A stretch of DNA of 64,000 nucleotides, from NCBI RefSeq assembly GCF_963921235.1, contig NC_086121.1, positions 17,546,001-17,610,000 of the forward strand, written 5' to 3'. Each line of letters opens with the position of its first letter. Position 1 is the stretch's first letter. Below the pieces are notes generated by a model. That model was not told the origin of the DNA. It made no database searches and saw only the letters and a program-made list of their open reading frames with translations. Of this stretch, positions 7,561-46,318 are shown piece after piece. The translations under genes and the position numbers were made by a program. The stretch comes from Mobula hypostoma. Taxonomy: Eukaryota.

Positions 7561-7885
7561 ATGATGAAAGGAAGGCCATTGAAGGAGCTAATATTGGCTT
7601 CTCGATCTATCTGTGATGCTTTTAATGGTCTGACCAGCACTCAATACCTAACTTTCCATGAGTTCAATTTCCTCCCTAGAAACATAAACCTGATTTATTT
7701 TTTGTATGGCCTGTGACCATAAGCTTTAATTTCCAAACAATAAATTACCTCTCTAGTCTTCCTCTCAAAATAACCTCCTTTTATCTGTAAACAACAGGAA
7801 TTCTGCAGATGCTGGAAATTCAAGCAACACACATCAAGGTTGCTGGTGAACGCAGCAGGCCAGGCAGCATCTCTAGGAAGAGGTA

Positions 7886-7925
7886 CAGTCAACGTTTCAG
7901 GCCCAGACCCTTCGTCAGGACGAAC
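7886..7925 (-). ncRNA. Minimal hammerhead ribozyme motif (left arm of the inverted PLE)
   Basis: minus strand: cgtc CTGACGA AGG-gtctggg-CCT GAAA CGTT gactg; stem I shortened to 3 bp, GUU triplet. Confidence 0.6.
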
Positions 7926-9464
7926 TGAAGGAAGAGTTAATAAGAGATTTGAAAGTGGAAGGGGGAGGGGGAGATCCAAAATGATAGGAGAAGACAGGAT
8001 GGGGAGGGATGGAGCCAAGAGCTGGATAGGTGATTGGCAAAAGGGATATGAGAGGATCATGGGACAGGAGGCCCAGGAGGAAAGATAAGGGGGGGGGGAA
8101 CCCAGAGGATGGGCAAGGGGTATAGTCAGAGGGACAGAGGGAGAAAAGGGAGAGTGAGAGAAAGAATGTGTGTATAAAAATAAATAACGGACGGGGTATG
8201 AGGGGGAGGTGGGGCATTAGCAGAAGTTTGAGAAGTCAATGTTCATGCCATCAGGTTGGAGGCTACCCAGACGGAATATAAGGTGTTGTTCTTCCAACCT
8301 GAGTGTGCCTTCATCTTTACAGTAGAGGAGGCCGTGGATAGACATGTCAGAATGGGAATGGGATGTGGAATTAAAATGTGTGGCCACTGGGTGATCCTGC
8401 TTTCTCTGGCGGACAGACCATAGGTATTCAGCAAAGCGGTCTCCCAGCCTGCATCAGGTCTTGCTCCCGATGTGGCCTTCTATATACTGGCAAAATTTCA
8501 CGCACATCTGCTCTCACTCCATCCTCCCGCCACCCCACTAGGAATAGGGTTCCTCTGGTCCTCACCTACCACCCCACCAGCCTCCGGGTCCAACATATTA
8601 TTCTCTGTAACTTCCGCCACCTCCAACGGGATCCCACCACTAAGCACATCTTTCCCTCCCCCCCTCTCTGTGCTGTCCGCAGGAATCGCTCCCTACGCGA
8701 CTCCCTTGTCCATTTGTTTCCCCCCCACCCCCTTCCCTCCCCTCTGATCTCCCTCCTGGCACTTATCCTTGTAAGCGGAACAAGTGCTACACATGCCCTT
8801 ACACTTCCTCCCTCACCACCATTCAAGGCCCCAGACAGTCCTTCCAGGTGAGGCGACACTTCACCTGTGAGTCGGCTCGGGTGATATACTGTGTCCGGTG
8901 CTCCCGATGTGGCCTTCTATATATTGGTGAGACCCGACGCAGACTGGGAGATCATTTCGCTGAAAACCTATGCTCTGTCTGCCAGAGAAAGCAGGATCTC
9001 CCAGTGGCCACACATTTTAATTCCATATCCCATTCCCATTCTGACATGTCTATCCACGGCCTCCCCTACTGTAAAGATGAAGCCACACTCAGGTTGGAGG
9101 AACAACACCTTATATTCCGTCTGGGTAGCCTCCAACCTGATGGCATGAACATTGACTTCTCTAACTTCCGCTAATGCCCCACCTCCTCCTCATACCCCAT
9201 CCGTTATTTATTTTTATACACACATTCTTTCTCCCACTTTCCTTTTTCTCCCTCTGTCCCTCTGACTATACCCCTTGCCCATCCTCTGGGCTTCCCCCCC
9301 CCCTTTTCCTTCTCCCTGGACCTCCTGTCCCATGATCCTCTCATATCCCTTTTGCCAATCACCTGTCCAGCTCTTGGCTCCATCCCTCCCCCTCTTGTCT
9401 TCTCCTATCATTTTGGATCTCCCCCCCCCCCACTTTCAAATCTCTGACCCACTCTTCCTTCAGT

Positions 9465-9502
9465 TAGTCCTGACGAAGGGTCTCGGCCTGAAATGTCGAC
9501 TG
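9465..9502 (+). ncRNA. Minimal type-I hammerhead ribozyme motif in the Penelope terminal repeat
   Basis: tagtc CTGACGA AGG-gtctcgg-CCT GAAA TGTC gactg: core boxes, stem II, stem I tagtc/gactg, GUC cleavage triplet. Confidence 0.72.
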
Positions 9503-10401
9503 TACCTCTTCCTAGAGATGCTGCCTGGCCTGCTGCGTTCACCAGCAACCTTGATGTGTGTTCCTTTTATCTGTGTTGAACTTTGTCAATTATTGCCACC
9601 CATTCTACACGTATATTAACAACATAATTTATTGCTGCTCTCCTCAGAAGTGAATCTTGCCCATTGCATCAGCATATTTGGAAGTTGTGTTTTTGATTCC
9701 AAAGTCTAGATCAGATGTGCAAAGCAATGGTCCCTCCATTAATCTTTGTGAAACGGCCTTCTACTGCAAATGGCTACCTTTTACTCCCAGTCTCTGCTTT
9801 CTATCCTGAACCCAGTTAGCAATCCTCTCTGCAATATATCATCCTGCAGAGGGCATGTTTGATCCTTTGCTAATTTTAATCTTGTTCCATTGGATTTTGT
9901 TTTTCTTTTAGATGTGTGTTATTTTATTCCTTTTGTGATTTTTGTTAACAATAAAAAATATTCTACTACTTTTTATCACTCTTTCCTTAATAAATATCAT
10001 ACTTTTAAATCCCATTTGATCTTTTTTCTTTATTGAAGTCATTTTCCTTTCAACCCTACAATGTCTTCTTTCCAAAACCTGATTGTTTCCAGTTGCCATT
10101 TTATTATAGGTATTGTGTATTGCTGTCTTGACAGCTTAACTTGTAAGATGGTTAGCTGCCTAAACATCTGTTCTAAAAGTCCTTTGACCACCCTAATTTA
10201 TTCTTTCCTATGCCTCTATGTTTTTATATTTGATCTATTTGCAGTTATTGTAGATCCTTCCTGTTTCTACCTCTGCTCCTTTCCTTCACCCCTAGTATCT
10301 TGTTTTCAGATTCTCCGTTCTGTGTTCTCATTAGCTTGTGCAATTTATTGGGAATGTAAGCAGTGTTGCAGAAAGGCACATATCTACCTGTCTTCTCCCA
10401 G

Positions 10402-10544
10402 GTTTAATCATCACCAATGCCTGGTATGGGAAGTTTGTGACTGACAGCAGTGGTAAGAATGAGAAGGCAAAGGTTATTGATGTGACTATTCCTCTTCAAT
10501 GTCTGGTGAAAGAGTCAAAACTCATCCTTACTGAAGCATGCAAG
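10402..10544 (+). CDS. DNAJC11: DNAJC11 coding exon (3rd from last)
   Basis: cccag|GTTTA...AAG|gtaagg; (G)[47 protein letters not shown]; 143 nt, phase 1 to 0. Confidence 0.96.
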
Positions 10545-10728
10545 GTAAGGTTAATTTTTATATCTACAATGTTGACTTTCCCAACTTGCCTTTAGGCAGT
10601 CCATGAGCAACTTACTCCCAGTGCAGAACTTGGGATATTTTGCCTATTTTTTTGCCTTCACATCTACAGCTATGTTTAAACTTCGGGTTGTTTGCTATTC
10701 ACTGATGACATCATTGACACTGGCATTG

Positions 10729-12685: not shown

Positions 12686-14390
12686 GTATGTTCAAAGTGA
12701 ACCCTTTCAACCATTGCAAAAATACTCAGTTAATATATACTCTTAATAATGTGCAAAGTACCAAATTCAGGATTTTAAGTCCAGCAGGAGGTACAAATTC
12801 CCAGTGTTTTGTGGTCATTTTAAATGAAGTCACACTTATACTTCAGTAGCTGCCTTTTTCAGCACTGTTTGATGAGTATTACAGTACATTGCTGGGATCA
12901 GGCTTGATGCACAAGATCTTGGTGGATGAGTTGCCAATGAAGCAAAGATGGCGAAGGCAGTTGGTAAAGTGGTAATGGGAAATGGCTTGGCTCTTTGGAG
13001 ATAAATGTTTGGTACTTGTCTGTTAAACCTTTGTTTTTAAACCTTTGCTTCACTGTTGTCCTGATCTTACCGCATGCAAATATAGAGTAAATTATTACCT
13101 AAGAAATAGCACACAGCCACACACTTAAACACTTTCAACTGTGACATTATTATAAACAGAGGATCACTGATGATTCTGGTATTCTGATGCTCCTGGAGAG
13201 GCCAGAATTTATTGCTTATTCAGCCGCTGAGAAGGATGTGATGAGATGGTTTATTGGTGCATTGTAAGAAAAAGCTTGTGGGACTGGGCGTTAGAAAGTA
13301 CATGTTAGCATTCAAGGTTAAGAGTTACAGGGAGAAGACAGAAAAATGGCAGTTAAGAAAAATAATGAGCCATGACTGAATGAAGAAGAAGACTTGATGG
13401 TCTTGAATGGTCTAATTATTTAATTAAATCTTATGGTCTTAACTAAGACAAAATAACAAAGTTATTTACAATGGGTTTAAAATGGGAAATGGAAGATTGT
13501 TGAGTGTTATCCACCACCTTTTGTTTCTCAGCTCCACAGGAAAAAATAATTTCCCTGTTAACCAGAGTTCCTCTTGTCCTCTCTCAGCACCCCATGAGCC
13601 TCCACATCCAGCACATCATTCTCCGCAACCTCCACCATCTTCGACAGGATCTTACCACTAAATACTTCTTTATCTCCCCCCGCCTGCTTTCTGCAGGGGT
13701 CGCTCCCTCTGTGATCCCCTTACCTATTCGTCTCCGCCACCCCCCATCGGTCTCCCTCTCGGTACTTATCCCTGCAAGCGGAGGAAGTGCTACAGTGTCC
13801 ATTCACCACGTCCTCTCACCTGGAAGGACTGTGTAGGACCTGATTCTATTCAGGGTCCCAAACAGTGCTTCCAGCTGAGACAGCACTTTACTTGTGAATC
13901 TGTTGGGGTCGTCCACTGTATCCACTGCTCCCAGTGAGGCCTCTTCTACATTGGTGAGACCCACCGTAGATTAAGAGACCACTTCGTTGAGCAGCTTTGC
14001 TCCATCCACAAAAGAGAAGCATTTCCCACTGGCCAACCATTTCAATTCCAATCCCCATTCCCATCCCAACATGTCGGTCCATGGCCTCCTTTAATGCCAC
14101 AATGAGGACGCTATGAGGTTGGAGGAACACACTTTATATTCCATATGGAAGGCCTCCAACTTGATAGCATGAACATCGATTTCTCTAATGGTAATTTTTT
14201 CCTCCCCCTTCCCTCTTCTTTCATTCCCCACCCTGGTTACCCTCTGGGCTCTTCTCTTCACCTGCCTATCAGCTCCCCCTGGTGCCCCTCCTTTCTCACA
14301 TGGTCCACTCTCCTCTCTTATCAGATTCCTTCTCTGTCATTTTACTTTCTTCACCTATTACCTCTCTGCTTTTTACTTCATTTTGCCTAT

Positions 14391-14494
14391 CCTCTCCCAC
14401 CTCCCGCTCCGTCCCCTCTCCCACCTCCAGCTCCGGCCCCTCTCCCACCTCCCGCTCCGGCCCCTCTCCCACCTCCCACTCTGTCCCCTCTCCC
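14391..14494. repeat. 24-bp minisatellite, ~4.3 copies
   Basis: Unit cctctcccacctcccgctccgKcc starting at 14391, 14415, 14439 and 14463. Confidence 0.9.
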
Positions 14495-14522
14495 TCCTTC
14501 TTATTCCGCTTTGTCCCCCTTC

Positions 14523-14560
14523 CAGTCCTGATGAAGGACCTCAGCCTGAAATGTTGACTG
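14523..14560 (+). ncRNA. Minimal hammerhead ribozyme motif
   Basis: cagtc CTGATGA AGG-acctcag-CCT GAAA TGTT gactg; perfect 5-bp stem I. Confidence 0.65.
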
Positions 14561-14909
14561 TTCATTTCCATGGACACTGCCTGACCTGCTGAGTTCCTCC
14601 AGCATTTTGTGCATGTTTCTCTGAATTTCTGCAGTCCTGTTCAGTAGCTCAAGTCTTATCCCCCCTGTGAGCATTGTCACTGTTTGCTTTGGCAGTTATC
14701 CTTTATAGGGAAGCAAAGGGAATGGTGGATATATTTGTAGCTTGAGATTTCTAAATTTGTATCTGATTTGTATTTCAATCTGGCATACTACTTAATAAAG
14801 GATGTTATTGTCTCATCAACATTTTTTTAAATAATCAACAACTATTTTTTATCTGCAATTAATGTGTGGTTTGTGGCTGAGTAACTGCTTCCTCTGATTC
14901 CCTTTACAG

Positions 14910-18232: not shown

Positions 18233-19750
18233 GGGAGGGGGGGTGGTGTGACCTATTAGAGGATAGCCATAGCAGTCAGGTCTCTGGCACTGTCTAGCTC
18301 TATGGCTCAGAAGGGAAGGGATGAGCTGTAGTGATAGGGGACTTGTTGGTTAAGAAACAGAAAGGAGGTTCTGTGGGCGAGAGCAAGATTCCCGATAGTT
18401 TGTTGCCTCCCAGGCGCCAGGATCTGTAACATCTTGGATTCTTAAATGGGAGGGTGAGCATCTAGAGAGATTGTGGTCCACGGCGGTACTACTGACATAG
18501 GCAGGCGGGGTGACGAGATGCTGCAAAGCGAATTCAGAGGGTTAGGTGCCAAGTTAAATGATAGGACCTCCAGAACTGTGATCTCAGGATTGCTAGAGGC
18601 CAGAAATAGGAAAATCATACAATTTAACTTGTGGCTAACGAGTTGGTGCAGGAGGGAGGGCTTCAGATTTTTGGATCATTGAGCTCTCTTCCAGGGAGAG
18701 TAGGACCTGGACAGTTTGATCCTGAACTGGAGGAAGACTAATATCCTTGCAGGAAGGTTTGCTAGTGTTGCATGGGGAGGGGGTTAAACTAGAGTTACAA
18801 GGGGATGGGAACCAAAGTGCCAGAACAGATAGTGGAGAAAGATATTGTTAAGTCGACATACAAGGTCAGGAATCAAAAGGTTGAGTATTGTGGGACTAAT
18901 ATTCTGAGTTGTGTGCATTTCAATGCAAGAAGTATTGGAGGAAAGGTGGATGAGATTAGGGCATGGATCAGCACATGGAATTATTACAGTGTAATCATTA
19001 GTGAAACTGAATTGCAAGAGGGGACAGGACTGTTGGCTCAATGTTCTGGTGTTCTGTTCTAGATGTGATAGAGCAGGAGGGATTAGAGGGTAAGGGGTGG
19101 CATTACTAGTCAGGGAAAATGTCACAGCTGTGCTCACTCAGGACAGACTGAAGACCTCATCGAGTGAGGCTTTCTGGATAGACAGTGCCTATAAAAAGCA
19201 TTCAACCACCCCCCCAGAAGTTTTTGTTTTTTTATTGTTTTACAACATTGAATCACAGTGGATTTACTTTGGCTTTTTTGATACTGATCAATAGAAAAGA
19301 CTTTCTTGTCGTGAAAGCAAATTTCAACAAATTGGCCAAACTTATTACAATTATTAAACACAATAGTTGATTGCCTCACCCCTTCAAGTCAAGACAAGTA
19401 TTTAGTAGATGCAGCTTTGGCAGCAATTAAAGCTTTGAGTCTCTGTGGATAGGTCTCTATCAGCTTTGCACATCTGCACACTGCAATTTTCACCATTCTC
19501 CTTTACAAAACTGCTCAAGCTCTGTCAGGGATTGTGAGTGAACAACCTTTTTTCCAAGTCCAGCCTTAAATTCTCAATTGGTTTGAAGTCTGGACTCTGA
19601 CTTGGCCTCTCCATGGCATTAACTTTGTTGTTCTTAAGCCATTCCTTGATAGCTTTGGGTTTATGCTTGGGGTCATTGTCTTGCTGGAAAACATTCTTCT
19701 CCCAAGTCAGTTCTCTTGCAGACGGCATCAGATTTTCCTCCAGGATTTTC

Positions 19751-20016
19751 CACTCAGCCAACACACTTTTCGTCCCTCTTCCCTCCAGGAGCAGGTTCAG
19801 GAGCTTGAAGACTCGTATGGCCAGATTTGGGAACAGCTTCTTTCCAACTGTGATAAGACTGCTGAACAGATCCTGACCCGGATCTGGGCTGTACCCTCCA
19901 AATATCCGGACCTGCCTCTCGGTTTTTTTGCATTACCTTACTTCCCATTTTCTATTTTCTATTTATGATTTATAATTTAAATATTTAATATTTACTAATT
20001 TTAACAATTTTTAATA
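19751..20016 (+). mobile_element. Non-LTR retroelement 3' fragment (Rex1/Babar-like) inserted in Tc1 A; tail resumes at 21447-21460
   Basis: HSANTLFVPLPSRSRFRSLKTRMARFGNSFFPTVIRLLN; flanked by the near-duplicate gattttcc / gatttccc. Confidence 0.75.
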
Positions 20017-21446
20017 CAAACCCCATTTCTAGAAAAGTTGGGATATTTTCCAAAATGCAATAAAAACAAAAATCTGTGATATGTTAATTCATGTGAACCT
20101 TTATTTAACTGACAAAAGTACAAAGAAAAGATTTTCAATAGTTTTACTGACCAACTTAATTGTACTTTGTAAATATACACAAACTTAGAATTTGATGGCT
20201 GCAACACACTCAACAAAAGTTGGGACAAACCCCTTTGTGCCAAAATTCGTGAGAGAATTGTTAGTCAGTTCAAAAGGAACATTTCTCAACTCAAGATTGC
20301 AGAGAATTTAGGCCTTTCAACATCTACAGTACATAATATAGTGAAAAGATTCAGAGACATCTCAGTGTGTAAAGGGCAAGGTCGGAAACCACTGTTGAAT
20401 GCGCGTGATCTTCGAGCCCTCAGACGGCACTGCCTAAGAAACCGTCATGCTACTGTGACAATTATAGCCACCTGGGCTCGGGAGTACTTCGGAAAACCAT
20501 TGTCACTCAACACAGTCCGTCGCTGCATCCAGAAATGCAACCTGAAACTGTATTACGCAAGGAGGAAGCCATACATCAACTCTATACAGAAACGCCGGCG
20601 AGTTCTCTGGGCCCGAGTTCATCTCATATGGTAGAAAGACTGTGGAACCGTGTGCTGTGGTCAGATGAGTCCACATTTCAGCTAGTTTTCGGAAAAAACG
20701 GGCGTCACGTTCTCCGTGCCAAAGATGAAAACGACCATCCAGATTGTTATCAGCAAAAAGTGCAAAAGCCAACATCTGTGATGGTATGGGGGTGCATCAG
20801 TGCCCACGGCATGGGTGAGTTGTACGTATGTGAAGGTACCATTGACTCTGAGGCGAATGTTAGGATTTTAGAGAGACTTATGTCGCCATCAAGGCGATGT
20901 CTCTTCCCGGGACGTCCATGCTTATTCAGCAGGGCAATGCCAGACCACATTCTGCATGGGCTACAATACCGTGGCTTTGTAGACACAGAGTGCGTGTGCT
21001 TGACTGGCCTGCTGCCAGTCCAGATCTATCTCCTATTGAAAACGTATGGCGCATCATGAAGAGGAGAATCAGACAACAGAGACCACGGACTGTTGAGCAG
21101 CTGAAGTCTTATATCAAGCAAGAATGGACAAAATTTCCAATTGCAAATCTATTACAATTAGTATCCTCAGTTCCAAAACGATTAGAAAGTGTTAGTAAAA
21201 GGAAAGGTGATGTAACATAATGGTAAACATGCCTCTGTCCCAACTTTTGTTGAGTGTGTTGCAGCCATCAAATTCTAAATTTGCGAATGTTTACAAAATA
21301 TAATTAAGTTGGTCAGTAAATCTATTGAAAATCTTTTCTTTGTACTTTTGTCAGTTAAATAAAGGTTCACGTGAATTAACATATCACAGATTTTTGTTTT
21401 TATTGCATTTTGGAAAATATCCCAACTTTTCTGGAAATGGGGTTTG
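20017..21446 (+). mobile_element. Tc1-like DNA transposon B (IR/DR type, ~210-bp TIRs, disrupted DD34E transposase)
   Basis: TA|caaaccccatttctagaaaagttggga ... tcccaacttttctggaaatggggtttg|TA; ORF pieces GQGRKP, VLWSDES, VMVWGCIS, QQGNARPH, WPAASPDLSPIENVW. Confidence 0.95.
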
Positions 21447-24400
21447 TATAAAGTATAAAGATTTCCCTGATTTTGCTGCATTCATTTAACCTTCTATTGT
21501 TACAATCCTTCCAGGGTCTGCTGCAATGAAGCATCTCTCACTCATCTCCTTCTTGCACAGTCAATCAGTTTTTGAGTACAGCCTGCTCTAGGCAGATTTA
21601 CAGCTGTCATATTCTTTACATTTTTTGATGATTGACTTGAATACTCCAAAGGATATTCAGTGACTTGGAAATTTTCTTGTATCCATCTCCTGACTTCTGC
21701 TTTTCAATAACCTTTTCATGGAGTTGCTTGGAGTGTTCTTTGTTTTCATGGTACAGTTTTTGCCAGGATACTGACACATCAGATGTTGGACCTTCCAGAT
21801 ACAGGTGCATTTTTAATACAATCAATTGAAACACCTTGACTGCACACAGATGATCTCCATTTAACTAATTATGTGACTTCTGAAACCAATTGGCTGCACC
21901 AGTGATGATTTGGTGAGTCATATTAAAGGGGATGAATACTTATGCAATCAATTATTTTGTTTTATATTTGTAATTAATTTAAATCACTTTGTAGAGATGT
22001 TTTCACTTTTTTTTGTTGATCAGTGTCAAAAAAAAGCTAAATTAAATCCACTGTAATTCAATGTTGTAAAACTATAAAACATGAAAACTTTAAATTTAGG
22101 GGGGGGTGAATTCTTTTTATAGGCACTGTAACTGAGAAATAAGAAAGGTATGACCATATTAATGGGATTATCTTATAGACTATCCCAAAGTCCGTGGAAT
22201 TTAGAGGAGCAAATTTGTAGGGAGTTTGCAGACTGGCAAGAAATACAAGGTTGTGATAGTAGGTGATGTTAACTTTCCACATATTGACTGGGACTCCCAT
22301 TCTGTACAAGGGCTGGATGGGAAAAGAGTTTGTCAGATTTGTTCAGGTAGGTTTCCTTAATCAGTACATAGAAATCCAAACTAGAGAGAGTGTGATACCA
22401 GATCTCCTATTAGGGAATGAGAAAGGGGAATTAACAGATGTTCGTGTAGAGATCTCTTTGCCTCTGGTGACCGTAACGTCTTCAAAAGTGAAATATTGAG
22501 AACAGAATTTATATGTTCCTGTCCGAAATAGACTTATGGAACCTTGGTTTTCGAGAGATATTGAGACCCTAGTTAGGAAGAGGTGCAGAGCTGGTATAGG
22601 CAGGCAGGAGCAAATGGGGTACTGAAGGAGTGAAAGAAGTGCAAGAGAACTCTTAAGAAGAAAATCAGGTGGGCTAAAAGAAGACATGAGGTTGCTCTAG
22701 CAGACAAGGTAAAGGAATCCTAAGAGATTCTATGGTTATATTAAGAGCAAAAGGATAGCAAGACACTAAATTGGTCGTCTGGGAGATCAGACAGGTAATC
22801 TATGCATGGAGCCTAAAGAGATGGGGGAGACCTTAAACGGACTTTTTTGCATCTGTATTTACAAACACAGTTGATAGGTGTGAGGCAATTTAGCAGCAAA
22901 GTCATGGTCCATATACAGAATATAGAGGAGGAGGTTTTTGTTGTCTTGAGGCAAATTGGGATGGATAAATCCCCAGGGCCTGACAGTGTGTTCCCTCAAA
23001 CCCTGTGGGAGCTAGTGCAGAAATTGCAAGGGCTCTAGCAGATATTTAAAACATCCTTAACCATTGCTGAGGTGTCAGGGGATTGGCACCTAATGATGTT
23101 CTGATGTTTAAGAAAGGCTCCAAGAATAAACCAAGAAATTATATGTCAAGTGAGTTTGACTTCAGTGGTGGAAAAGTTATTGGTATAAGTATTTTGATGG
23201 AAAGGAAAGGAACTGACTAGGGATAGCCAACATGGCTTTGTGCATGGTAGGCAGAGTCTAACTAATCTTATAGAGCTTTTTGACAAATTTACGGGCGTAG
23301 TTCATGGAGGCCTGGCAGTGGATGTTGTCTACATGGACTTCAGCAAGGCATTTGACAAGGCCCTGCATGGGAGGCTGGTCAAGAAGTTCAGTCACTTGGC
23401 ATTCAAGATGAGGCGATAAACTAGTTTGGACACTGGCTTCGCGGAAAAAGCCAGTGTAATTGTAGATGATTGCCTCTCTGACTGGAAATCTATGACTAGT
23501 GGTGGGCTGCAGGGATTGGAGCTGGGTCAGATGTTGTTTGTCATCTGTATCAGTGATCTGGATGATAATGTGGTGAACTGGATTAGTAAATTTGCAGTTG
23601 ACATCAAGATTGGGGGTGCAGTGGATAGCAAGGAAACTTGCAGCAGGATCGGGATCAGCTGGAAAAATGGCAGGTGGAATTTAATACAGGCAGCTGTGAG
23701 GTATTGCACTTTGGTAGGACCAGCCAGGGTAGGTTTTACACAGTGAGTGGTAGGGCACTGAAGAGTGTGGTAGAACAGAGGAATCTGGGAAACCATAATT
23801 CCTTGAAAGTGGTGTCACAAGCAGATAGGGTCGTAAAGAAAGCTTTTGACACACTGGCCTTCATGGGTCAATGTACTGATTACAGGAGTTGGGATGTTAT
23901 GTTGAAATTGAGTAAGATGTTGGTGAGACCTAATCTGAAGTATTGTGTGCATTTTTGGTCATCTATCTACAGGGAAGATGTAAGTAAGAGTGCAGACCAA
24001 ATTTACAAGGAAGTTTCTGGGACTTGAGGACCTGAGTTTAAATATTGGGAAAGGCTGAATAGGTTAAGAATTTATTCCCTAGAACTTGGAAGACTGAAGG
24101 GAGATTTGATAGAGATATACAAAATTATGAGGGGTATAGATAGGGTAAATGCAAACAGGCTTTTTCCACTGAGATTGAGTGGGACTGCAACTAGATGTCG
24201 TGGGTTAAAGAGGAAAGGTGAAATGTTTACGAGGAAAATGAGGGGGAACTTCTTCACTCAGAGGATGGTGAGTGTCTGGAGCGAGCTGCGAGCACCATTG
24301 GTGGATGTGGGTTTGATTTCAAAATTAAAGAGAAATTTGGATAGGTACATGGATGGAGATCTGTGGTCTGGGTGCAGGTCAATGGCACCAGGCAGATTAA

Positions 24401-24511
24401 TGGCTTAGCACAGTGTAGATGGGCTGAAGGGCTTGTTTCTTTACTGTAGTGTTCCATGATAATAATGAGCCACCCTCTTTTTTGGATAAAACAAACAAAA
24501 TGTTATGACAA

Positions 24512-24721
24512 ACAAGAGAAAATCTGCAGATGTTGGAAATCAAAGTAACACACAAAATGCTGCAGGAACTCAGCAGGCCAGGTAGCATCTATGGAAAAGA
24601 GTACAGTTGACGTTTCAGGCCAAGATCCTGATGAAGTGTCTTGGCCCAAAATGTCGATTGTTTTCTCTTTTCCAAAGATGCTGCTTGGCCTGATGAGTTC
24701 CTCCAAAATTTTGTCTGTATT
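24512..24721. mobile_element. Non-coding palindromic Penelope-derived mini-element with 15-bp TSD
   Basis: Two inverted terminal-repeat arms; TSD AAAATGTTATGACAA (24497-24511) / AAAATATTATGACAA (24722-24736); degenerate hammerhead halves at the centre. Confidence 0.82.
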
Positions 24722-26462: not shown

Positions 26463-27015
26463 AAACACGAGAAAGTTTGCAGATGCTGGAAATCCAAAGC
26501 AACACACACAAAGTGATGGAGGAACTCAGCAGGTCAGGCAGCATCTATGGAAATGAATAAACAGTCAGTGTTTCAAGCCAAGACCTTTCTTCAGGACTGA
26601 AAAGGAATGAGGAAAGAAGGTGTTGGAGCAACACTTTATATTCCATCTAGGTAGCCTTCGACCAGATGGCATGAATTTTGATTTCTCCTTCTGGTAAAAA
26701 AAAATCCCTTTCCCCTCCCCTCTTCTTCTATCCCCACTCTGGCCTACCTCTCTCACCTACTCCTGGGTCCCTTTCTCCTTTGGTCTATTCTCCTCTCCTA
26801 CCAGATCCCTTCTTCTACAGCTCTATCTTTCCAACCTGGCTTCACACCTTCATCTTCTAGCCAGCCTCCTTCCTTTCCTCCCACCTTTTTATACTGGTGT
26901 CTTTCTCCTTTTCAGTTCTGAAGAAGGATCTCAGCCCAAAACATCAACTGTTTATTCATTTCCATAGATGCTGCCTGACTTGCTGAATTCCTCCAGCATT
27001 TTGTGTGTTTTGCTT
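26463..27015. mobile_element. Inverted Penelope-derived element with GIY-YIG C-terminal remnant and 13-bp TSD
   Basis: Minus arm 26463-26620, plus arm 26621-27015; TSD CAGATTAGATGAT (26450-26462) / CAGATTAGGTGAT (27016-27028); degenerate hammerheads at 26562-26599 (-) and 26913-26950 (+). Confidence 0.85.
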
Positions 27016-32285: not shown

Positions 32286-32432
32286 GGGAGATTAGCAATT
32301 GCTTACAACCAGCAGGGTGTGTTGATTAACCATTTAGTATTTGTATCAGCACCAATTTCAAAGTTTTCTGGACTGCTGTTTTATAGGCCTATTGACTTCG
32401 GCGAGAACTGTTGCTCTTGAGCAACACACAAC

Positions 32433-32531
32433 CTGCTGCAAGAACGCAACAGATCGAGGAGCATCACTGAGAGGAAAGAAATTGCTGGTGTTTTGGGGCC
32501 CACCCAAACCTTGTTGTTCTTGCTCACCAGT
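32433..32531 (-). CDS. THAP3: THAP3 probable coding exon 4 (linker)
   Basis: gtgcag|ACT GGT...CAG CAG|gttgtg; TGEQEQQGLGGPQNTSNFFPLSDAPRSVAFLQQ; 99 nt, phase 0-0; acceptor choice uncertain. Confidence 0.55.
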
Positions 32532-36440: not shown

Positions 36441-36681
36441 AAAGCGTATTTAAAAATACACCTTTCACACTTTTTATCACATTAGTCCCGATGAATTAAA
36501 ACCAAAAATGCAGAAACATTCAGCAGGTAGAAGTATTAAAAGGTTGTGCAGCATCTTTGTAAAGATAAATAAAGGCAACTTTTCAAGTGCAGACTCTTCA
36601 TCAAAACTGGGAAAGTGAGAAAATGAATCTGTTTTCTGTTGCAGAGAGGGTGAGGGAACTATGGGTACGATAAAGGGAACA

Positions 36682-37420: not shown

Positions 37421-39769
37421 TACATCTGATTGAATGAGGCCAGGATTGCCAGGATGATTCCAATAGTTATAGAATTGGCTGATTAAGAGAACAGAGGACA
37501 GAGAGAGAAGAAACAAACAAAAGAATATGTAAAATCATGAAATGCAGGCCATCGTTGGTGTATAATAGGAAACCAGGAATGCTGAAAATGCACAGCAATG
37601 TCCATAGAAAGAGAAATAGGCAAGTTAATATAAAATGGATCATCTTACAACAGGACTGGCCAGTTCTGACACAAACAGAAGTGTGTTACTGAAACTGCTG
37701 AGTTTGATTTTAATAATCAAAGGTTGTCTGTTGCTAGAAAGAAGAGTGCTTATGTGGATCTGGTCGAACACAGTGCAGGAGGTCAGAGATGTTTAGGATG
37801 GTGTAGTGGGCTAAGGAAAAGCAAGAAGCTCAGGCCTGCCAGTTTAATTTCTTTTATCCCACTCGCACTCCAACCTAGACATCTCTGACCAGATGGAATG
37901 GAGGTGCTTTGTAAATTGGCCATCTGTTATGTTTATGGCTTGTTCAATGTCATGAGCACATTAGATTGTAAAAAAAAATACAGATGTATTACTGCTTCAC
38001 CTGGAAGGTCTGTTAGGTTCCTGGATGGTGGGAACAGTGAAAGTAAAAGAACAGATGTTGCACCTCCTATGGTTGCGTGGAAAAGTGCCATGACTGAGGT
38101 GTACCAAGGAGTCACAAAAGGAACAATCCCTTCAGAAAGCCAAAAAGGAGATGTGTCTGCTGGTGGATTTCGTTTTGAAGGTGGTGGACCTTATGAAAGG
38201 TGGTCATTGAGGAAATGGCGTTGAGAGGGAAAACAGATCAGCCATGATCAAATGATGGAGACTTGAGGGGCTGAGTGGCCCAATTCTGCTCATATGTCTG
38301 ATGATTTTATGGGAAAAGAACACTGGCGTGAGGTATCCTAGCCATGCTTGGAGAAAATGAGGTGAGAGCAAAGTTGTGGGAAATAGGTGAAATGTAACTG
38401 TGGTATGGGTCCTAATGCCCTTCCCTTGGACAACATTGGTGTCATGGAGAGGGGAGACTTGCATCATGGGCAGTTGCCAGTCTTCCATACAACATTGCCC
38501 GGAGGTTGAAGACTTTCCAGCCGCAGATCCATGGTCTCGCAAGACTAACAGATGCCTTTATTTAACTGTGGAATATGTATTGCAAAGGATTCTGTGTGGA
38601 AAATATCATCAAAGCAATTACAACAGAGATGGAAGAATTGAGAAAATGGAATGGAGTTCTTATAGAAAGCAGTGTGGGAGGAAATATAGTTAACATTGTA
38701 TCTGTGTTAGATATCAGCTAATCTATCCCACTGAGATGGAGATGGAGAATATGTAAATCAAGTAATTGTGAGAACAAGGTAGAAATCAGCAGCAAGTGTA
38801 ATGACATTTCCAAGTTCTGGATGAATGCAGGAAGCTGCCTCAGTACTGAAACACAAAATGAATTGAGGGAAGGAACCTGAGCCAGATGAAACAAACTGTT
38901 CCAACCTATTCCACAAAGGTTTGGGCAAAGCTTTAGATTACACAAGTTCTTATAGCTCCATTTTTAATCTGGAGAAAGTGAATGAGGATGAAGATGTCAT
39001 TCAATGTGAGCGTAATTTCATCTGGGTGAATAAATATGCCTCTAAACAGAAGCTATTTGGCTTCTGTTCAAAGAAGTGAAAGGTCCTCAGACCACCACAC
39101 CTGGGATGGATGTGCAGAGGAACTGTATGTGCGTGATGAAGGCGAGCCTGTTAGGAAATAGAAAATTGACAAAGAAATTGAGGGCATCCGAGATGTCATA
39201 GAGTAAAAGCAAGATCAAAATAGGAAGAAATAAGTTTAATAGAGCAACAGCAGACAGAAAACAATGTGTCTGCCTCTGCAGTCCTGCTTATGGGGAGAAG
39301 GTAAAAGTGGCTAAGCCAGTGGGGAATACAAAGCTGACGGTGTTAGAGGAAGATCTCTCTAGTGAGTTTTTTTTGATATGCAGGGAATATTGGTGGCCTA
39401 TATGGTTCCATATAGAATAATTAGATTTCATTGCTTATAATAATTCTTAAGTCTTGCACAGACTGCTGCCGCAAAATAACACATTTCACGGCATTTTTCA
39501 GTCATGATAAACTTGATTGTGATTCTGATCTCTTATTTGTCTTTGTAAATTGCCATGGGAACTTGTAACAATAGATATATCCTTATTTTAATCTCTCACT
39601 CAAAAAGACAGAATTTCCGACAAATCATACCTCCTCTACCTGCCATGATCAGGCCGCAAAATTTGCTTCTTTACCTTTTTAAATTGAGTCAAATAAAGCC
39701 AAACAACTTCTAGTATTATTTTCATCCATTGCTATATTACCTAGTCCTGTCACTGTCTATATATCAAGT

Positions 39770-41060: not shown

Positions 41061-41066
41061 TTTATT
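41061..41066 (-). terminator. Probable distal PHF13 polyadenylation signal (3'UTR ~2.8 kb)
   Basis: AATAAA on the minus strand within TGTAAATAAA, followed by U-rich sequence; the intervening region is AU-rich and repeat-poor. Confidence 0.55.
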
Positions 41067-41692
41067 TACAAAATAACTTCCGATATACACGTACAAAGTT
41101 TCACAGAAACAAGGTTTTCTTTGTTCCGCTTTGATAAACCTTCCATGGAGACATTTCAACATTCCTTGCAACATCACTGCAAAGTGTCCCTAAATCAGAG
41201 ACTTGTTAGTCTTGCATGACAAAGTACTGCAGATATTCCCATTGGGAGCAAAAGCACCCACCAGTCCTTGTAAAGTTGCAAAGCTGCTTTATAAAAGTCA
41301 CCCTCATTAAAATAACTAAAATGGGGTTGCGGCTAGGATAAGTTTTCCTCTGGAAGAGTGTGATAAAATGAGTTTTGATCACATACCAAGGAACATTTTA
41401 CAACTATGATTTACTACGATAGATTTCTGGGATCCTTATGAATTAAATTGTATATGTGTCAGATATGGGTTTTATCTCCTGATAAAGTTGACTTTCTTTC
41501 AACAGTTCTACAGGGATCAGTCACCTTCCACCTGCTGGCCATTCCAGCTATTATTTACATCTCAAGCCTTGAGAGTGAGAGAGAGTGTGTGTGTGTGTAT
41601 TAATTTTCTCTGATTAACACACCTGACCCCATCTCTGTCCTTGCTCACTGTCCAACAATGCAAACGCTAGCAATCACAACTAGGACTAAAGG

Positions 41693-41878
41693 GACAAGAG
41701 ATTCTGCAGATGTTGGAAATCCAGAGTAACACATACAAAATGCTGGAGGAACTCAGCAGGTCAGACAGAATCTATGGACCAGTCCTGATGAAGCATCTCA
41801 GCCTGAAATGTTGATTCTTTATTCCTCTCCATAGATGCTGCCTAACCTGCTGAGTTCCTCCAGCATTTTGTGTGTGGT
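41693..41878. mobile_element. Palindromic Penelope-derived mini-element in the probable PHF13 3'UTR
   Basis: Inverted arms caaaatgctggaggaactcagcagg / cctgctgagttcctccagcattttg; TSD ACTAAAGG at 41685-41692 and 41879-41886; hammerhead remnant at 41780-41816 (+). Confidence 0.82.
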
Positions 41879-43892
41879 ACTAAAGGTTCTGAATCTTATC
41901 TGATTTTCAATGGGAAATGAACCTAGGCTTTTCCCCTCATAAAATGATTGTTTCCTCACATCCCAATCCTAAACATGGGGAAAGTAAGTCTGAGGAGGTA
42001 GTTTTATTGACAAGGGAGACAACCAGTTCACACTTTTCTTGTAGCGGCAAAATATGGGGTGGGGGAAAAGGGAATATTCTGGCGGATGAAATTTTGTATT
42101 ATTTGAATGAGTGACTGAGGAGGCAAATTAATCTTGTGTGCATTAGTGCAAAGGGGATTGATTGTCAGACATCTTTTAGTACCCACTATATCTTTTATCC
42201 CCATAATTACATCTAGCTAGCCTAGATCATTGGTTATAGTGGTAAGACACAGAAAACAAAGATGGGCAAGTAGGTGAGATGTACAGTAAGGGGAGGATTC
42301 TCATTTCATTTACTTTATCCGTAGGCAAAAGTTTGGGAGCTATTTCTCGTAAGTGAGTTTACTAATGTCAGGATTGAGAAGATCCAAATTGGCAAATATC
42401 CGTAGGATAAAACAGAAAATAAAAATGCAGGTACAATATTTTACGGCAATATACATTTTGCAGTATATAGAGAAGGAAGGTTGCACAAGAAAGACAATCC
42501 CCTTCATGTAGCTAGAAGACCAGATTAAAAAAAAACAGATGAATGATATGGGGACACTTCAATAGACAGTGATCTCCTACTCACATAAACTTTTAGCTGG
42601 ACTTACTATTCTGAATTAATTCCAGTACGTTGCCATAACAGATCTAATGTACCATCAACAGATAGGATTTTAAAAAAACACATCTGAACTAAATTGTAAA
42701 CAGACTTTTTAAACAGCTAACTTTCAACCAGCAGTTTAATGTTATTGTCTGTAAACAACATAAAGATGGAGATCAATTCAATGACCATTTAAAAACTAGC
42801 TCCTAAGGATCTCATTTTCTCCTTCTCACTGTAGGAGTTTGTTTTTAAGTACCAAATGTTAGGCATCAGAAACTGTGTAAAGTCTGCTCAAAAATAATAA
42901 AAAAGAAATAATCTTAAAAAAGAATTCCAAGTTGCTTTCCCCATTCCAAATCCTTCTAGTAATGTCAGTCACACTACAAAAAAAAAATGAACCCACCCAT
43001 CAAATGTTTTAACACAGTTATCTACCTTTCCAGAAAGAATATTTAGTTCTGGTTCAATTGTTATTGACTTTTTTTAATGCAGGTGGGCAAATTATATCAT
43101 TGGTACCAAAAAGGGCATTGTTTTCTCTTGATACAACAGTAAAATCCAGGAAATATGAAAAAAAAAAGGCAAACATCACTTGTGAAGAGAGATGTTATAG
43201 CATCAAATGTGTATCCTGGCTGGAAATTAAGATACTTTAACCCACCTTTACTGACTGAATATGAAAGAGTTGAAGTGTATTTACAGCATCTTTAGGTTTT
43301 ATTGCACTGTTAAATGCCAGGCTACTAGTTAAAGGTATTACTTATTTTTCCCCCTTTCTCAATTTAGAGTGTTTTAAGGCTTTGTCTATTGCACTGGGCC
43401 CCTTTTGTTTGCTTGAGACTCTTAATAACAAAGGAGTGCAGAGGAAGGAAGATGAGAACGATGAACTAAGATTATTGCCATCTTTACTTTCTCTTGTGGA
43501 TTTTCTTATTTTGAACTCAGAGGCGGTGGAGTCAGGGTGATAACCAACAGAAGGCTCAGAAGGGTAAAGGAAATGTTGTTTGTAGTTGGCATGTTTGCCC
43601 CCACCTCCCACACCACCCCACCCCCGATGCCCAAATTCCATCCCATGATAGACTAGCCAAGACTATAATTGATATAGTAGTCTTGTAGGTTCTGAAATGG
43701 AAATCATGAGGGTGTGCAGAAAGAAAGTCAAAAAAGCAGGCAATTCTTGCATGAATGGGTGGAAGTCTCCAAGCAAGTCCATCAGGATCTTTTGTCTTAA
43801 AAAAAGGCTTGTTTTTTTGCCTCATTATCATTTCAAGATTCTCTTTTCTCTTTCCCAGGTATAAAACAAATCAAGAAAAAGCTTCTGACACC

Positions 43893-44119
43893 TCAGTCAA
43901 GGAAATGCTTTCTGCAGCCGGTCCGGGACCGGTTTGATCGTCGAATATCACATTTGGAGTCTCGGCACCTTTGACAGACATACACCTCCGGGACATTGGA
44001 CTTGCGGATTTTTGCACAGGACAGGTGGATCCAGGTACCACACTCATTACACTCTATCATTGGACGTCCAGCAAATGGCTTCATGCAGTAACACGTCACC
44101 AGATCCCAAGAATCATCAT
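43893..44119 (-). CDS. PHF13: PHF13 terminal exon (PHD finger, H3K4me reader)
   Basis: gaacag|AT GAT GAT TCT TGG; [55 protein letters not shown]...HFLD*; C4HC3 PHD; total CDS 966 nt = 321 aa. Confidence 0.97.
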
Positions 44120-46042
44120 CTGTTCAGGGGAGAACTTTCAAAAGTTAATTATCTCACATCAGGTAATAACATCTTGCAAATATTCACATCAGTTTTCACA
44201 AGGTGAGGAACTCCTTGACAGTTGACTTGGATTGTATTTGTTATTATGAAGGAGAAAACTACACATTCCTTTGTGCATAACTGTTTTCATATATAACAAA
44301 GTGACAATAACCAGGTTAACCGATGACAGTGAAGAGATAAATATTGATGAGTATAGTGGTTAGGAATTTTTATTTTTACACCCAACTCAGAAGGCAAATG
44401 AAGCCTCAGTTTGCCATCTCAATTTAAATGTCACACTCATTAAAATGTTGCACTTTCTCAGTATTGACACTATAAATGTAATCCCAGATCTTTTGTTCAA
44501 GTGCATGGAGTGCACCTTGATCTTGAGGCAAATGTTATCCATGCACTGTATTGGGACCTGTATGGTCACTGAAGTGAAGCATAAAAGGGCAGCCAGAAGA
44601 CTTAATTTTAAGGACATTAATCAATGGCCAAGGACAACAATATTTCTCAGTCCTAGTTTGAGCAGGACCACCTCTACTTTGACTGTTTGACCAAATTTCT
44701 GCTTTTCTGATGAGAATTACTACATCTGTGGAAATAGGTTGGGGTAACAGCTGTCATATCAAAAAAAAGCATGAGAGCGAATGAAAATGATGCTGACCTA
44801 TTGATCTGCTTTGATTTGTAACCTTCAATATCCTGATCTTAAAGATTAATTGAAATAATTCATTACAGTTTTCTATAGACTTTCTATACCCTTGTATGAT
44901 TTGCTTTCAGGTCATCCTAACAGCCAAGTTCTAATGTCAAAGTTATTCCCCTTTCCTCCAGACCAGGGATTCCCAAAATTTTTTAAACCATGGACCCCAA
45001 ATTGAGAACTCCTGCTCATCACTAAAGTAAATAGCTTCTATCTAATTTCTTTCTATCAGATCAAACCTTTTATTATCTTACATACTCTGAATAGATCATA
45101 CATAATCTGAACAAATATAATTTTAACATTAGAGCAAAATGGGAATCAGCTTTGCCCAATAACCATCAAGTGAAGAATTGGCTTAGTGTGAAAATACATA
45201 AAATCTTACTAACCAAGAAGACCTCAAGTTGTCACAGAGTTTGTTGATCTTAAGAAAGGCTCAAAGCAAGTTAAAACCAGTCTTGGTAAACTGAGGTACA
45301 AAGAGATCGCTCATGTGCCCTCTACTGGAAGGTGCCTGTACAATCATAATTGCCATATAAAAAAGACTGGATGTGATTTCCCCACAAGTTTAAATTCCAA
45401 GTGGCTTAATTTATAAACTACAGAAAAAGGTGAAGGGAGGGAGGAGCTGGTATGCTCCAAACAACAATAGAATCAAACCCAAGCAACGTTCTAGAGATAG
45501 AGTTTTGGACATGATTGCTCATGAAGAGAGCAAGCCATTTAGTTTTTGTAAATTGAACTCCAGAATTTACTGCATGATGTACACTAAACGACAGGGATTA
45601 ATAAGTGAACCTTTTAGTCTATGTGCATTTGTAATGGGTAAGTAGTTGCCAAACACACGAACCAATGATAATAATGAACGGGCTCCATGCAATAAAGCGA
45701 GTGCTGTCACTAGTTATTTGTATGTTTATGACATATTTATTCCAAACACAAGAGTCATGGCCTGATCCTTGCTAGTCCTAGAGATTACAAATACATCCCA
45801 AGAATTGATGAGGTACCATTCATCACATGGGTATGGCAATCAAAAGCTGGCCTTTGTCACGATGCTTAAGGGTTAATTCTTATGCCACGATGCTCAAGGG
45901 TTAATGCTTAATTGGTTATCAATTTGTAAATCATATAATCTGCTGTTAGTTTTGGTGGTTAATAGTTTGAAAATAAACCACCTATTTTTAGATTTATCAT
46001 GGTGTGTTACTCCATTGATGATTACACATTACTAAGGACAGA

Positions 46043-46140
46043 GAAACACACACCAAAGTTGCTGGTGAACACAGCAGGCCAAGCAGCATCTGTAGGAAGA
46101 GGTGCAGTCGACGTTTCAGGCCGAGACCCTTCGTCAGGAC
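46043..46140 (-). mobile_element. Solo ~100-bp Penelope terminal-repeat fragment in PHF13 intron 3
   Basis: Near-identical to 7825-7921; flanked by AGGACAGA at 46035-46042 and 46136-46143. Confidence 0.85.
46105..46140 (-). ncRNA. Minimal hammerhead ribozyme motif with intact core, sense to PHF13 pre-mRNA
   Basis: minus strand: gtc CTGACGA AGG-gtctcgg-CCT GAAA CGTC gactg; palindromic ACGT; stem I only 3 bp. Confidence 0.65.
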
Positions 46141-46318
46141 AGACATGTGTCACCTCAGTTAACCCAGTCAACCAAGGGGACATTACTTGTCCACACAACC
46201 TAACCTCAGGTTTGAACAATTGTACCAGCCAAAGCAGAAGACACACATTGAGTCTGTAACACAGAGACATACACACAAGGATGACCATCAGTAACAGCCA
46301 TCAGTACATGGCACTCAC

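What the first reader, a model, noticed from the sequence alone, without database searches (positions are those of the whole stretch)
7789..46143. Family of hammerhead-ribozyme-bearing Penelope-like elements forming a size series down to non-coding palindromes
Seen: one terminal repeat occurs in six insertions, 7789-9561 (1.77 kb), 13550-14632, 26463-27015 (553 bp), 24512-24721 (210 bp), 41693-41878 (186 bp) and 46043-46140 (~100 bp). Each carries CUGANGA-AGG-loop-CCY-GAAA-NRUH flanked by a cagtc/gactg stem, or a decayed version. Five have their own flanking direct repeat. Established: Penelope-like elements carry minimal type-I hammerheads lacking a stable stem III that can cleave as dimers. 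Inference: the short palindromes are either extreme truncation products or an independently mobilised non-autonomous, retrozyme-like family that uses the PLE machinery in trans. I cannot tell from this window whether it has been described in this lineage.
Basis: partly seen in the sequence, partly recalled or inferred. Interest (0 to 1): 0.8.

Follow-up and report, generated by a model that had tools for sequence, protein, structure and literature searches.

The report
Truncated fold-back Penelope retrotransposon insertions
The six repeats are real but ordinary: they are dead, 5'-truncated insertions of a Penelope-like retrotransposon in a ray genome, carrying that class's known minimal hammerhead motif and inserted in its known hairpin shape, not a new ribozyme-driven mobile family.

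Summary
All six insertions share the last ~100 nt of one retroelement. Four are two-armed fold-backs (A 7789-9561, C 26463-27015, D 24512-24721, E 41693-41876). Two are single arms (B ~13559-14641, F ~46045-46135). Five have 10-15-bp target duplications; B has none that convinces.

The element is a canonical Penelope-like element (PLE). The coding remnant is 45% identical to the C-terminal GIY-YIG domain of 800-920-aa proteins that also carry a reverse transcriptase domain. The 38-nt motif matches the published PLE minimal hammerhead, although no Rfam model detects it.

The size series is explained by independent 5' truncation of each arm. Every fold-back has its own central junction, and one arm only carries a ~38-nt tail. 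Inverted 5'-truncated copies, a one-sided 30-40-bp tail, and cleavage plus extension of both DNA strands are all published for PLEs.

A retrozyme-like reading fails on architecture. The two ribozyme motifs lie on opposite strands, so no transcript holds two in the same sense. Short copies also arise in both subfamilies.

One residue remains: three arms start within 6 nt of the ribozyme's 5' edge.

The scan had already found this on other DNA of this genome, and earlier follow-ups reached the same verdict.

The parts
7776..7788 (.). Target-site duplication of insertion A, left copy (right copy at 9562-9574)
   Evidence: 13/13 identical direct repeat
7789..7827 (-). A: ~39-nt tail, present only on the inverted (left) arm
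   Evidence: Alignment of all arms. The right arm ends at ..TGTGTGTT without it.
7789..8461 (-). A: inverted arm (3' end of the element, 5'-truncated inside the GIY-YIG coding region)
   Evidence: 7822-8461 pairs with 9566-8930 at 93%. Mismatches are 6.1%, mostly transitions.
7886..7923 (-). A left arm: minimal hammerhead motif, core intact
8462..8490 (+). A: 29-nt direct micro-duplication of 8899-8927 at the central junction
   Evidence: 96.6% identity. Read as a template-switch scar; that reading is inference.
8491..9561 (+). A: sense arm. Contains the linker, the GIY-YIG coding remnant (frameshifted near 8720), a ~300-nt CT-rich 3' UTR, the hammerhead and the untailed 3' end.
8848..9174 (+). 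A: 108-codon ORF remnant, the GIY-YIG endonuclease C-terminus of the PLE protein
   Evidence: Pfam GIY-YIG E=0.0085, below cutoff. 45% identity over 103 aa to the C-terminus of an 891-aa RVT_1+GIY-YIG protein, E 5e-26. Atlas GIY-YIG clusters score 0.96.
9465..9502 (+). A right arm: minimal hammerhead motif, core intact
13559..14641 (+). B: single 5'-truncated copy of the second subfamily, with a tail carrying small deletions and no convincing TSD
14523..14560 (+). B: minimal hammerhead motif, core intact
24512..24721 (.). D: 210-bp fold-back. The tailed inverted arm (24512-~24629) is truncated inside stem II. The sense arm (~24622-24721) starts 2-4 nt before CUGAUGA. TSD at 24497-24511 and 24722-24736.
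   Evidence: Arms are 18% diverged and G12 is lost in the sense arm.
26463..27015 (.). C: 553-bp fold-back. The tailed inverted arm (26463-~26620) has its motif at 26562-26599(-). The sense arm (~26621-27015) starts ~25 codons before the stop and has a decayed motif at 26913-26950. TSD at 26450-26462 and 27016-27028.
41693..41876 (.). E: 184-bp fold-back. The tailed inverted arm (41693-41778) is truncated ~45 nt downstream of C3 and has no ribozyme. The sense arm (41779-41876) starts 6 nt before CUGAUGA, with the motif at 41780-41817. TSD at 41683-41692 and 41877-41886.
46045..46135 (-). F: single untailed arm of the A subfamily, starting at the hammerhead's 5' edge (motif 46105-46142). The TSD at 46035-46044 and 46136-46145 overlaps that edge.
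   Evidence: (92.6% to A)
36541..36609 (-). Older decayed copy of the terminus with a degenerate hammerhead (UUGAUGA)
37570..38250 (-). Older decayed PLE copy (coding remnant at 38009-38140 plus a degenerate 3' end)
   Evidence: tblastn; sequence read
49061..49177 (+). Two head-to-tail fragments of the 3' terminus (old partial tandem)
32423..32497 (-). Weak old remnant of the terminus
   Evidence: nhmmer E 4.7e-06

Best explanation
These are dead-on-arrival insertion products of autonomous Penelope-like retrotransposons. At least two subfamilies are present.

Proposed mechanism:
1. The element's RT-endonuclease nicks both strands of an ordinary genomic site. The stagger becomes the 10-15-bp target duplication.
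2. Each nick primes reverse transcription of the element RNA from its 3' region.
3. One cDNA starts at the internal start site, just after ..UGUGUGUU. The other starts ~38 nt further downstream, which gives the one-sided tail.
4. Both cDNAs stop at arbitrary points.
5. The two minus-sense cDNAs are joined in the middle, giving an inverted two-arm insert whose length depends only on the two truncation points.
6. If only one strand is extended, the product is a single 5'-truncated arm (B and F).

The hammerhead motif is present simply because it lies 60-100 nt from the 3' end. Any arm longer than ~100 nt includes it.

Shown here: the anatomy, the target duplications, the tail asymmetry, the unique junctions, the PLE protein relationship and the motif.

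Taken from published biochemistry of another PLE: cleavage and extension of both strands, and two RT start sites.

Inferred: the order of events and how the arms are joined.
For: - Shared 3' terminus in all copies.
- Inverted arms.
- Target duplications of 10-15 bp.
- The ~38-nt tail sits on exactly one arm in 4 of 4 fold-backs.
- Each fold-back has a different junction and different arm lengths: A 640/1071 nt, C ~120/~395 nt, D ~72/~100 nt, E ~49/~100 nt.
- Arm divergence is 6-18%, so the events have different ages.
- The two subfamilies (A+F versus B, C, D, E) each contain long and short copies.
- The coding remnant is homologous to the C-terminus of RVT_1+GIY-YIG proteins of 800-920 aa.
- PMC8557442 describes the adjacent inverted 5'-truncated copy and a 30-40-bp tail at one end only.
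- PMC11167929 shows that a purified PLE protein cleaves and extends both strands and starts reverse transcription at two sites, with the tail lying between them.
- PMC4209133 describes minimal hammerheads in PLE terminal repeats.
Against: - No full-length or RT-coding copy lies in the window, so the autonomous source is inferred from database relatives.
- Only four fold-backs were examined.
- In vitro, the published enzyme used both start sites on both strands without preference. That does not by itself predict exactly one tailed arm per insertion.
- Three arm starts cluster at the ribozyme's 5' edge, which pure random truncation does not predict.
Confidence: 0.85

Rival explanations
1. A discrete short RNA is a preferred template that the PLE enzyme copies in trans. 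It would start at the 5' base of hammerhead stem I and end at the element's RT start sites (~100-140 nt). It could be made from a promoter in the terminal repeat or by RNA processing. The shortest units would then be a SINE-like, ribozyme-headed non-autonomous lineage and not random truncations.
For: Three of ten arms (D-right, E-right, F) begin 0-6 nt upstream of C3. Under a smooth truncation model I estimate this at roughly p of 0.01 after allowing for the post hoc choice of position; this is my own arithmetic, not a tool result. The sequence at that edge (YCAGTCC) fits the loose initiator consensus YYANWYY in both subfamilies. Earlier scan notes report the same pile-up elsewhere in this genome; that is a lead, not independent evidence.
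Against: The three starts are not at one identical base. The initiator match is weak, about 1/128 per position. The nucleotides involved are already constrained as stem I. The short arms belong to both subfamilies and do not form their own clade. No expression data could be examined. Published data show HHR cleavage is dispensable for insertion in vitro, and no reads were found ending at the cut site.
Confidence: 0.2
2. The short palindromes are a self-standing non-autonomous fold-back family. A palindromic insertion would be transcribed and re-copied as a whole unit by PLE machinery, in a retrozyme-like or viroid-like way.
For: Each palindrome keeps an RT-recognition 3' end on both strands, so read-through transcripts could in principle be templates. 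An earlier scan note (s1-141886) suggests that one 242-bp fold-back elsewhere was re-copied.
Against: All four fold-backs in this window have different junctions. D and E are no closer to each other than to the long copies. The hammerheads are on opposite strands, so no transcript carries two sense ribozymes and no unit-length RNA can be excised or circularised. Transcripts fold into -108 and -91 kcal/mol hairpins. The ribozyme core is decayed or missing in most arms of D and E. Recurrent ~240-bp palindromes elsewhere are also what two arms that both start at the ribozyme edge plus one tail would give (100+100+38).
Confidence: 0.06
3. The palindromes are DNA-level products: MITE-like DNA transposons with terminal inverted repeats, or post-insertion inverted duplications.
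For: They have inverted termini flanked by direct repeats.
Against: Target duplication length varies from 10 to 15 bp. The arms are the 3' end of a retroelement with variable inner truncation. One terminus carries a 38-nt extension that the other lacks, so the termini are not symmetric. Single-arm copies with the same ends exist (B and F).
Confidence: 0.02

Closest known systems
[quoted passage not shown] 2021 (PMC8557442)
   Same: C-terminal GIY-YIG domain downstream of a reverse transcriptase in the nearest full-length relatives. Heavy 5' truncation. An adjacent inverted 5'-truncated copy forming inverted repeats. A 30-40-bp tail at one end only. A hammerhead in the terminal region.
   Different: Nothing essential differs. 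No full-length copy or direct pseudo-LTR pair lies in this window, and the clade within PLEs was not resolved.
PAc (Poseidon of Anolis carolinensis) in vitro system, Frangieh et al. 2024 (PMC11167929)
   Same: Cleavage and extension of both DNA strands would give two opposed arms. Two RT start sites spaced by the tail would give arms with and without the ~38-nt tail. The hammerhead lies ~60-100 nt upstream of the start sites.
   Different: In PAc the start sites lie inside the beginning of the ORF, in an AC-rich stem-loop, and both sites were used on both strands. Here the sites lie after a GU-rich run in non-coding sequence, and every fold-back has exactly one tailed arm.
Minimal PLE hammerheads (min-HHR), Cervera and de la Pena 2014 (PMC4209133)
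   Same: Intact catalytic core. [quoted passage not shown] Short stems I and II. No closed helix III but a palindromic ACGU at 15.1-16.1, so an active fold needs a dimer.
   Different: Position 11.1 is U (or CA-decayed) in all window copies, giving G.U or A-U instead of the usual G10.1-C11.1. No cleavage data exist for this family.
Animal non-LTR retrozymes (Cervera and de la Pena 2020; Li, Clavereau and Pollet 2026, bioRxiv 10.64898/2026.07.22.740005)
   Same: Non-coding, PLE-terminus-derived sequence with a type-I hammerhead, presumably dependent on PLE enzymes.
   Different: Retrozymes are head-to-tail tandem units with ribozymes in the same sense that release unit-length, circularisable RNA. 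The units here are inverted, with ribozymes on opposite strands and unique junctions.

Membership tests
Penelope-like elements (canonical EN+) | C-terminal GIY-YIG endonuclease domain | tested here: met
   The 108-aa remnant has a Pfam GIY-YIG hit at E 0.0085, below cutoff. It is 45% identical over 103 aa (E 5e-26) to the GIY-YIG C-terminus of P0162. 2992 relatives were found and 493 have E<=1e-10. Atlas GIY-YIG clusters score 0.96.
Penelope-like elements (canonical EN+) | PLE-type reverse transcriptase upstream of the endonuclease in one ORF | tested here: inconclusive
   No RT-coding sequence is in the window, because all copies are truncated downstream of it. In 6 of the 7 long relatives scanned (609-924 aa), RVT_1 lies upstream of a C-terminal GIY-YIG; P0089 showed GIY-YIG only. 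The PLE clade of that RT was not tested phylogenetically.
Penelope-like elements (canonical EN+) | Complex insertions: 5' truncation, adjacent inverted or tandem copy, 30-40-bp tail at one end | tested here: met
   Four fold-backs each have a one-sided ~38-nt tail. There are also two single arms and one old partial tandem.
Penelope-like elements (canonical EN+) | Target-site duplication of variable length from staggered nicks | tested here: met
   10-15 bp in five of six copies.
Hammerhead ribozyme (minimal type I, PLE variant) | Catalytic core C3 U4 G5 A6 N7 G8 A9 ... G12 A13 A14 A15.1 ... U16.1 H17 | tested here: met
   The core is intact in A-left, A-right, B, E-right and F. It is decayed in C-right and D-right, where G12 is A, and C-left has a decayed helix III segment.
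Hammerhead ribozyme (minimal type I, PLE variant) | Base-paired stems I and II flanking the core, with covariation | tested here: met
   87% of cells are paired, against at most 44% for slid controls. Three pairs change on both sides (6/500 shuffles reach this). Only 9 related, decaying copies were available, so support is modest.
Hammerhead ribozyme (minimal type I, PLE variant) | No stable helix III; palindromic 15.2-16.2 that allows a dimeric helix III | tested here: met
   ACGU is retained in A-left, D-left and F, and is CpG-decayed to AUGU or ACAC elsewhere. Co-folds of two copies are more stable than two monomers, but they were not checked for the catalytic fold.
Hammerhead ribozyme (minimal type I, PLE variant) | Match to a curated hammerhead covariance model | tested here: not met
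   There is no Rfam hit at gathering score over the whole window and none at E<=10 on 9380-9600. This is expected, because Rfam models include a closed helix III.
Hammerhead ribozyme (minimal type I, PLE variant) | Self-cleavage after H17 | not testable with these tools
   This needs in vitro transcription of monomer and dimer constructs, ideally with the element's protein, since the PAc ribozyme was protein-assisted.
Retrozymes (non-LTR, animal) | Two or more hammerheads in the same sense, bounding a unit that is excised and circularised | tested here: not met
   In every fold-back the two motifs are on opposite strands. Each strand has at most one sense motif.
Retrozymes (non-LTR, animal) | Copies share one unit structure (same boundaries and junctions) | tested here: not met
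   The four fold-backs have four different junctions and arm lengths.

The most novel reading that the evidence does not exclude
The clustering of arm starts at the 5' base of hammerhead stem I reflects a discrete ~100-140-nt RNA: ribozyme head plus RT-recognition tail. It would be made from an initiator-like site in the terminal repeat or by processing, and the PLE enzyme would copy it preferentially in trans. This would be a minimal ribozyme-headed, SINE-like parasite of Penelope-like elements. It would also explain the recurrent ~240-bp palindromes reported elsewhere in this genome (two such units plus one tail).
Probability: 0.15. Interest if true: 0.45.

Novelty: new member of a known kind. 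Interest (0 to 1): 0.15.

Why it matters
It matters mainly as annotation. About 7.6% of this window, and by the scan's other notes a comparable share of many windows of this ray genome, consists of truncated Penelope-like insertions whose hairpin shape can be mistaken for MITEs, viroid-like RNAs or retrozymes.

The set is a clean natural illustration of two published properties of this class: reverse transcription primed on both strands, and two RT start sites. In all four fold-backs exactly one arm is tailed, and it is the shorter arm. This is a small regularity that the in vitro work does not predict. It could constrain models of how the two cDNAs are coordinated, but that needs a genome-wide count.

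Tried and rejected
- Rfam at gathering score on the whole window and at E<=10 on the best copy gave no hammerhead match. I attribute this to the missing helix III, not to absence of the motif.
- Two metagenome scans, one for the conserved terminus and one for the ribozyme, found nothing, so no outside copies were available for covariation.
- The look-up of encoding contigs for the stingray protein P0028 returned no DNA because the file was too large.
- The atlas search with the 66-aa linker piece was uninformative; the best score was 0.56.
- Folding single arms with the tail gave no energy beyond shuffles (z of -0.06 and 0.43). A tempting 8-bp pairing between AGAUGCUG after the ribozyme and CAGCAUCU in the tail showed no compensatory changes in D and E and was dropped.
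- A splice-acceptor reading of the CT-rich tract plus CAG just before the ribozyme was set aside, because the whole 300-nt 3' UTR is CT-rich.
- The search of earlier findings by sequence and by words returned nothing.
- I could not decide between the two stem II registers, A-U first or a bulged A with G.U first.


Full report
**What is there**

Four insertions are two-armed inverted structures:
- A, 7789-9561. Arms 7822-8461 and 9566-8930 are 93% identical.
- C, 26463-27015.
- D, 24512-24721.
- E, 41693-41876.

Two are single arms: B (about 13559-14641, + strand) and F (about 46045-46135, - strand).

Target-site duplications are clear for five copies: A 13/13, C 12/13, D 14/15, E 9/10 and F 9/10. 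B has none that convinces. The CCTGTT near its 3' side belongs to the element's own tail.

There is also a small head-to-tail pair at 49061-49177. Together these make about 7.6% of the window.

**What element it is**

The long copies A and B, and the inner end of C, carry coding remnants (tblastn).

- The 108-codon remnant in A (8848-9174) gives a sub-threshold Pfam GIY-YIG hit.
- It has 2992 relatives in the 1.8-billion-protein library.
- Among these are proteins of 600-920 aa in which the match sits at the extreme C-terminus. Six of the seven scanned have RVT_1 in the middle and GIY-YIG at the end.
- The remnant is 45% identical over 103 residues to one of them, E 5e-26.

Reverse transcriptase followed by a C-terminal GIY-YIG nuclease is the architecture of canonical endonuclease-positive Penelope-like elements (PMC8557442). 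No RT-coding part lies in this window, so that feature rests on the relatives.

The closest named database hit is a stingray gene model. Earlier scan notes call the host a devil ray.

**The ribozyme motif**

About 60 nt before the untailed 3' end, each sufficiently long arm has a five-base stem I strand followed by:
- CUGAYGA;
- one extra A;
- a 3-4-bp stem II with a four- to seven-base loop;
- GAAA;
- CG (or its CpG-decay products UG or CA);
- UC or UU;
- the complementary stem I strand.

The core is intact in both arms of A, in B, in E-right and in F. It is decayed in C-right and D-right (G12 lost) and cut away in D-left and E-left.

Across nine copies, 87% of cells in stems I and II form standard pairs, against at most 44% when the partners are slid. 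Three pairs show changes on both sides. The sample is small and the copies are related, so this is modest support.

There is no closed helix III. The four bases A-C-G-U are self-complementary, so a second copy could supply helix III. [quoted passage not shown]

Rfam's hammerhead models do not see the motif, even at E<=10. I attribute that to the missing helix III. Cleavage itself cannot be tested here.

**Why the sizes form a series**

Aligning all ten arms in element sense shows that every arm is the same 3' end cut off at a different 5' point.

| Arm | 5' truncation point |
|---|---|
| A-left | ~640 nt from the 3' end |
| A-right | ~1071 nt from the 3' end |
| C-left | ~25-30 nt upstream of the ribozyme |
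| C-right | ~25 codons before the stop codon |
| D-left | inside stem II |
| D-right | 2-4 nt before C3 |
| E-left | ~45 nt downstream of C3 |
| E-right | 6 nt before C3 |
| F | 0-4 nt before C3 |

Each fold-back therefore has its own central junction.

In A the junction carries a 29-nt direct copy of the sequence that lies just upstream of where the inverted arm stops (8462-8490 = 8899-8927). I read this as a template-switch scar; that reading is inference.

The arms of one insertion differ by 6% (A), 8% (E), 15% (C) and 18% (D), mostly by transitions. These are separate events of different ages.

Two sequence subfamilies are present: A with F (about 90% identical), and B, C, D and E (74-90%). 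Each contains both long coding copies and short non-coding ones.

**The one-sided tail**

In all four fold-backs the inverted arm continues ~38 nt beyond the point (..TGTGTGTT) where the sense arm ends and the target duplication begins. The extension is conserved between subfamilies. Single-arm B has it, with small deletions. Single-arm F does not.

This matches two published descriptions:
- The biochemical finding that a purified PLE protein cleaves and extends both DNA strands and starts reverse transcription at two sites, with the tail being the sequence between them (PMC11167929).

**Most likely mechanism**

The most likely mechanism is two opposed target-primed reverse transcriptions at staggered nicks, one from each start site. 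Both abort at arbitrary points, and the host or the enzyme then joins them.

- The anatomy is shown here.
- The enzymology is borrowed from the Anolis element.
- The joining step is inferred.

Two regularities go slightly beyond the papers. Exactly one arm is tailed in 4 of 4 fold-backs, and that arm is always the shorter one. With n=4 this is only suggestive. The in vitro work saw no strand preference for start sites.

**Why it is not retrozyme-like**

Retrozymes and the animal tandem forms need ribozymes in the same sense on one transcript, so that a unit-length RNA can be released (bioRxiv 10.64898/2026.07.22.740005).

Here the two motifs of a palindrome are on opposite strands, so each transcript has at most one sense motif. 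Transcripts of D and E fold into near-perfect hairpins of -108 and -91 kcal/mol (z of -14 and -10.5). Most motifs in D and E are decayed or truncated.

The caveat is that there are only four fold-backs, of which two are short.

**What remains open**

Three arms (D-right, E-right and F) begin within 6 nt of the 5' base of stem I. Smooth random truncation makes that unlikely. My rough estimate is p of about 0.01 after allowing for the post hoc choice of position; this is my own arithmetic, not a tool result.

Earlier notes of this scan report the same pile-up and recurrent ~240-bp palindromes elsewhere in the genome. Two ribozyme-edge arms plus one tail would give about 240 bp, so identical-looking junctions elsewhere need not mean re-copying.

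A discrete short template RNA starting at that edge is possible. The edge fits the loose initiator consensus. I could not test this without expression data or genome-wide copies, and I give it about 0.15-0.2.

**Comparison and verdict**

The structures work like, and pass the testable membership features of, canonical Penelope-like element insertions with minimal hammerheads. They fail the defining features of retrozymes.

The kind is well described. This ray family is at most a new member of it. The scan had already met the same thing on other DNA of this genome, and earlier follow-ups reached the same conclusion. Interest is low.

Noticed in passing
window 7789-9561, 24512-24721, 26463-27015, 41693-41876: In all four fold-backs the tailed arm is the shorter arm (about 640 vs 1071, 120 vs 395, 72 vs 100 and 49 vs 100 nt), and exactly one arm is tailed. 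This hints that the two reverse transcriptions are coordinated and not independent.
   Followed up: partly
window 8462-8490 and 8899-8927: A 29-nt direct micro-duplication sits at the central junction of insertion A. It copies the sequence immediately upstream of the point where the inverted arm stops, and looks like a template-switch scar.
   Followed up: partly
element termini, e.g. window 9530-9561 and 7789-7830(-): A CCAGCA hexamer occurs ~15-21 nt upstream of each of the two inferred RT start sites, in both subfamilies. It is possibly a positioning signal and possibly chance.
   Followed up: no
window 14391-14498: A 24-nt tandem repeat (4.5 copies, 91% matches) lies inside the CT-rich 3' UTR of copy B. 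It is absent from copy A.
   Followed up: no
window 20011-20242 / 21221-21452, nested in 19222-19279 / 22030-22087: There is a pair of 232-nt inverted repeats (93%) 978 nt apart, lying inside a second pair of 58-nt inverted repeats. They are unrelated to the Penelope family and are probably nested DNA transposons with long terminal inverted repeats.
   Followed up: no
window 60783-60952 / 62234-62398: Another inverted-repeat pair (62 nt at 89% and 53 nt at 77%) lies ~1.3-1.5 kb apart. It was not examined.
   Followed up: no
window 46206-46979 (-): A 257-aa ORF lies right next to copy F and has no Pfam match. A 190-aa ORF at 54047-54619 is equally blank.
   Followed up: partly
protein P0028 (Hypanus sabinus, named ATP synthase F(0) subunit C3-like isoform X1): Residues 107-168 of this 168-aa stingray gene model are ~80% identical to the Penelope GIY-YIG C-terminus. 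The annotated isoform probably ends in an exonised or mis-called transposon fragment.
   Followed up: no
window 49061-49177: Two head-to-tail fragments of the Penelope terminus lie ~65 nt apart. This is an old example of the partial-tandem arrangement, next to the inverted ones.
   Followed up: partly
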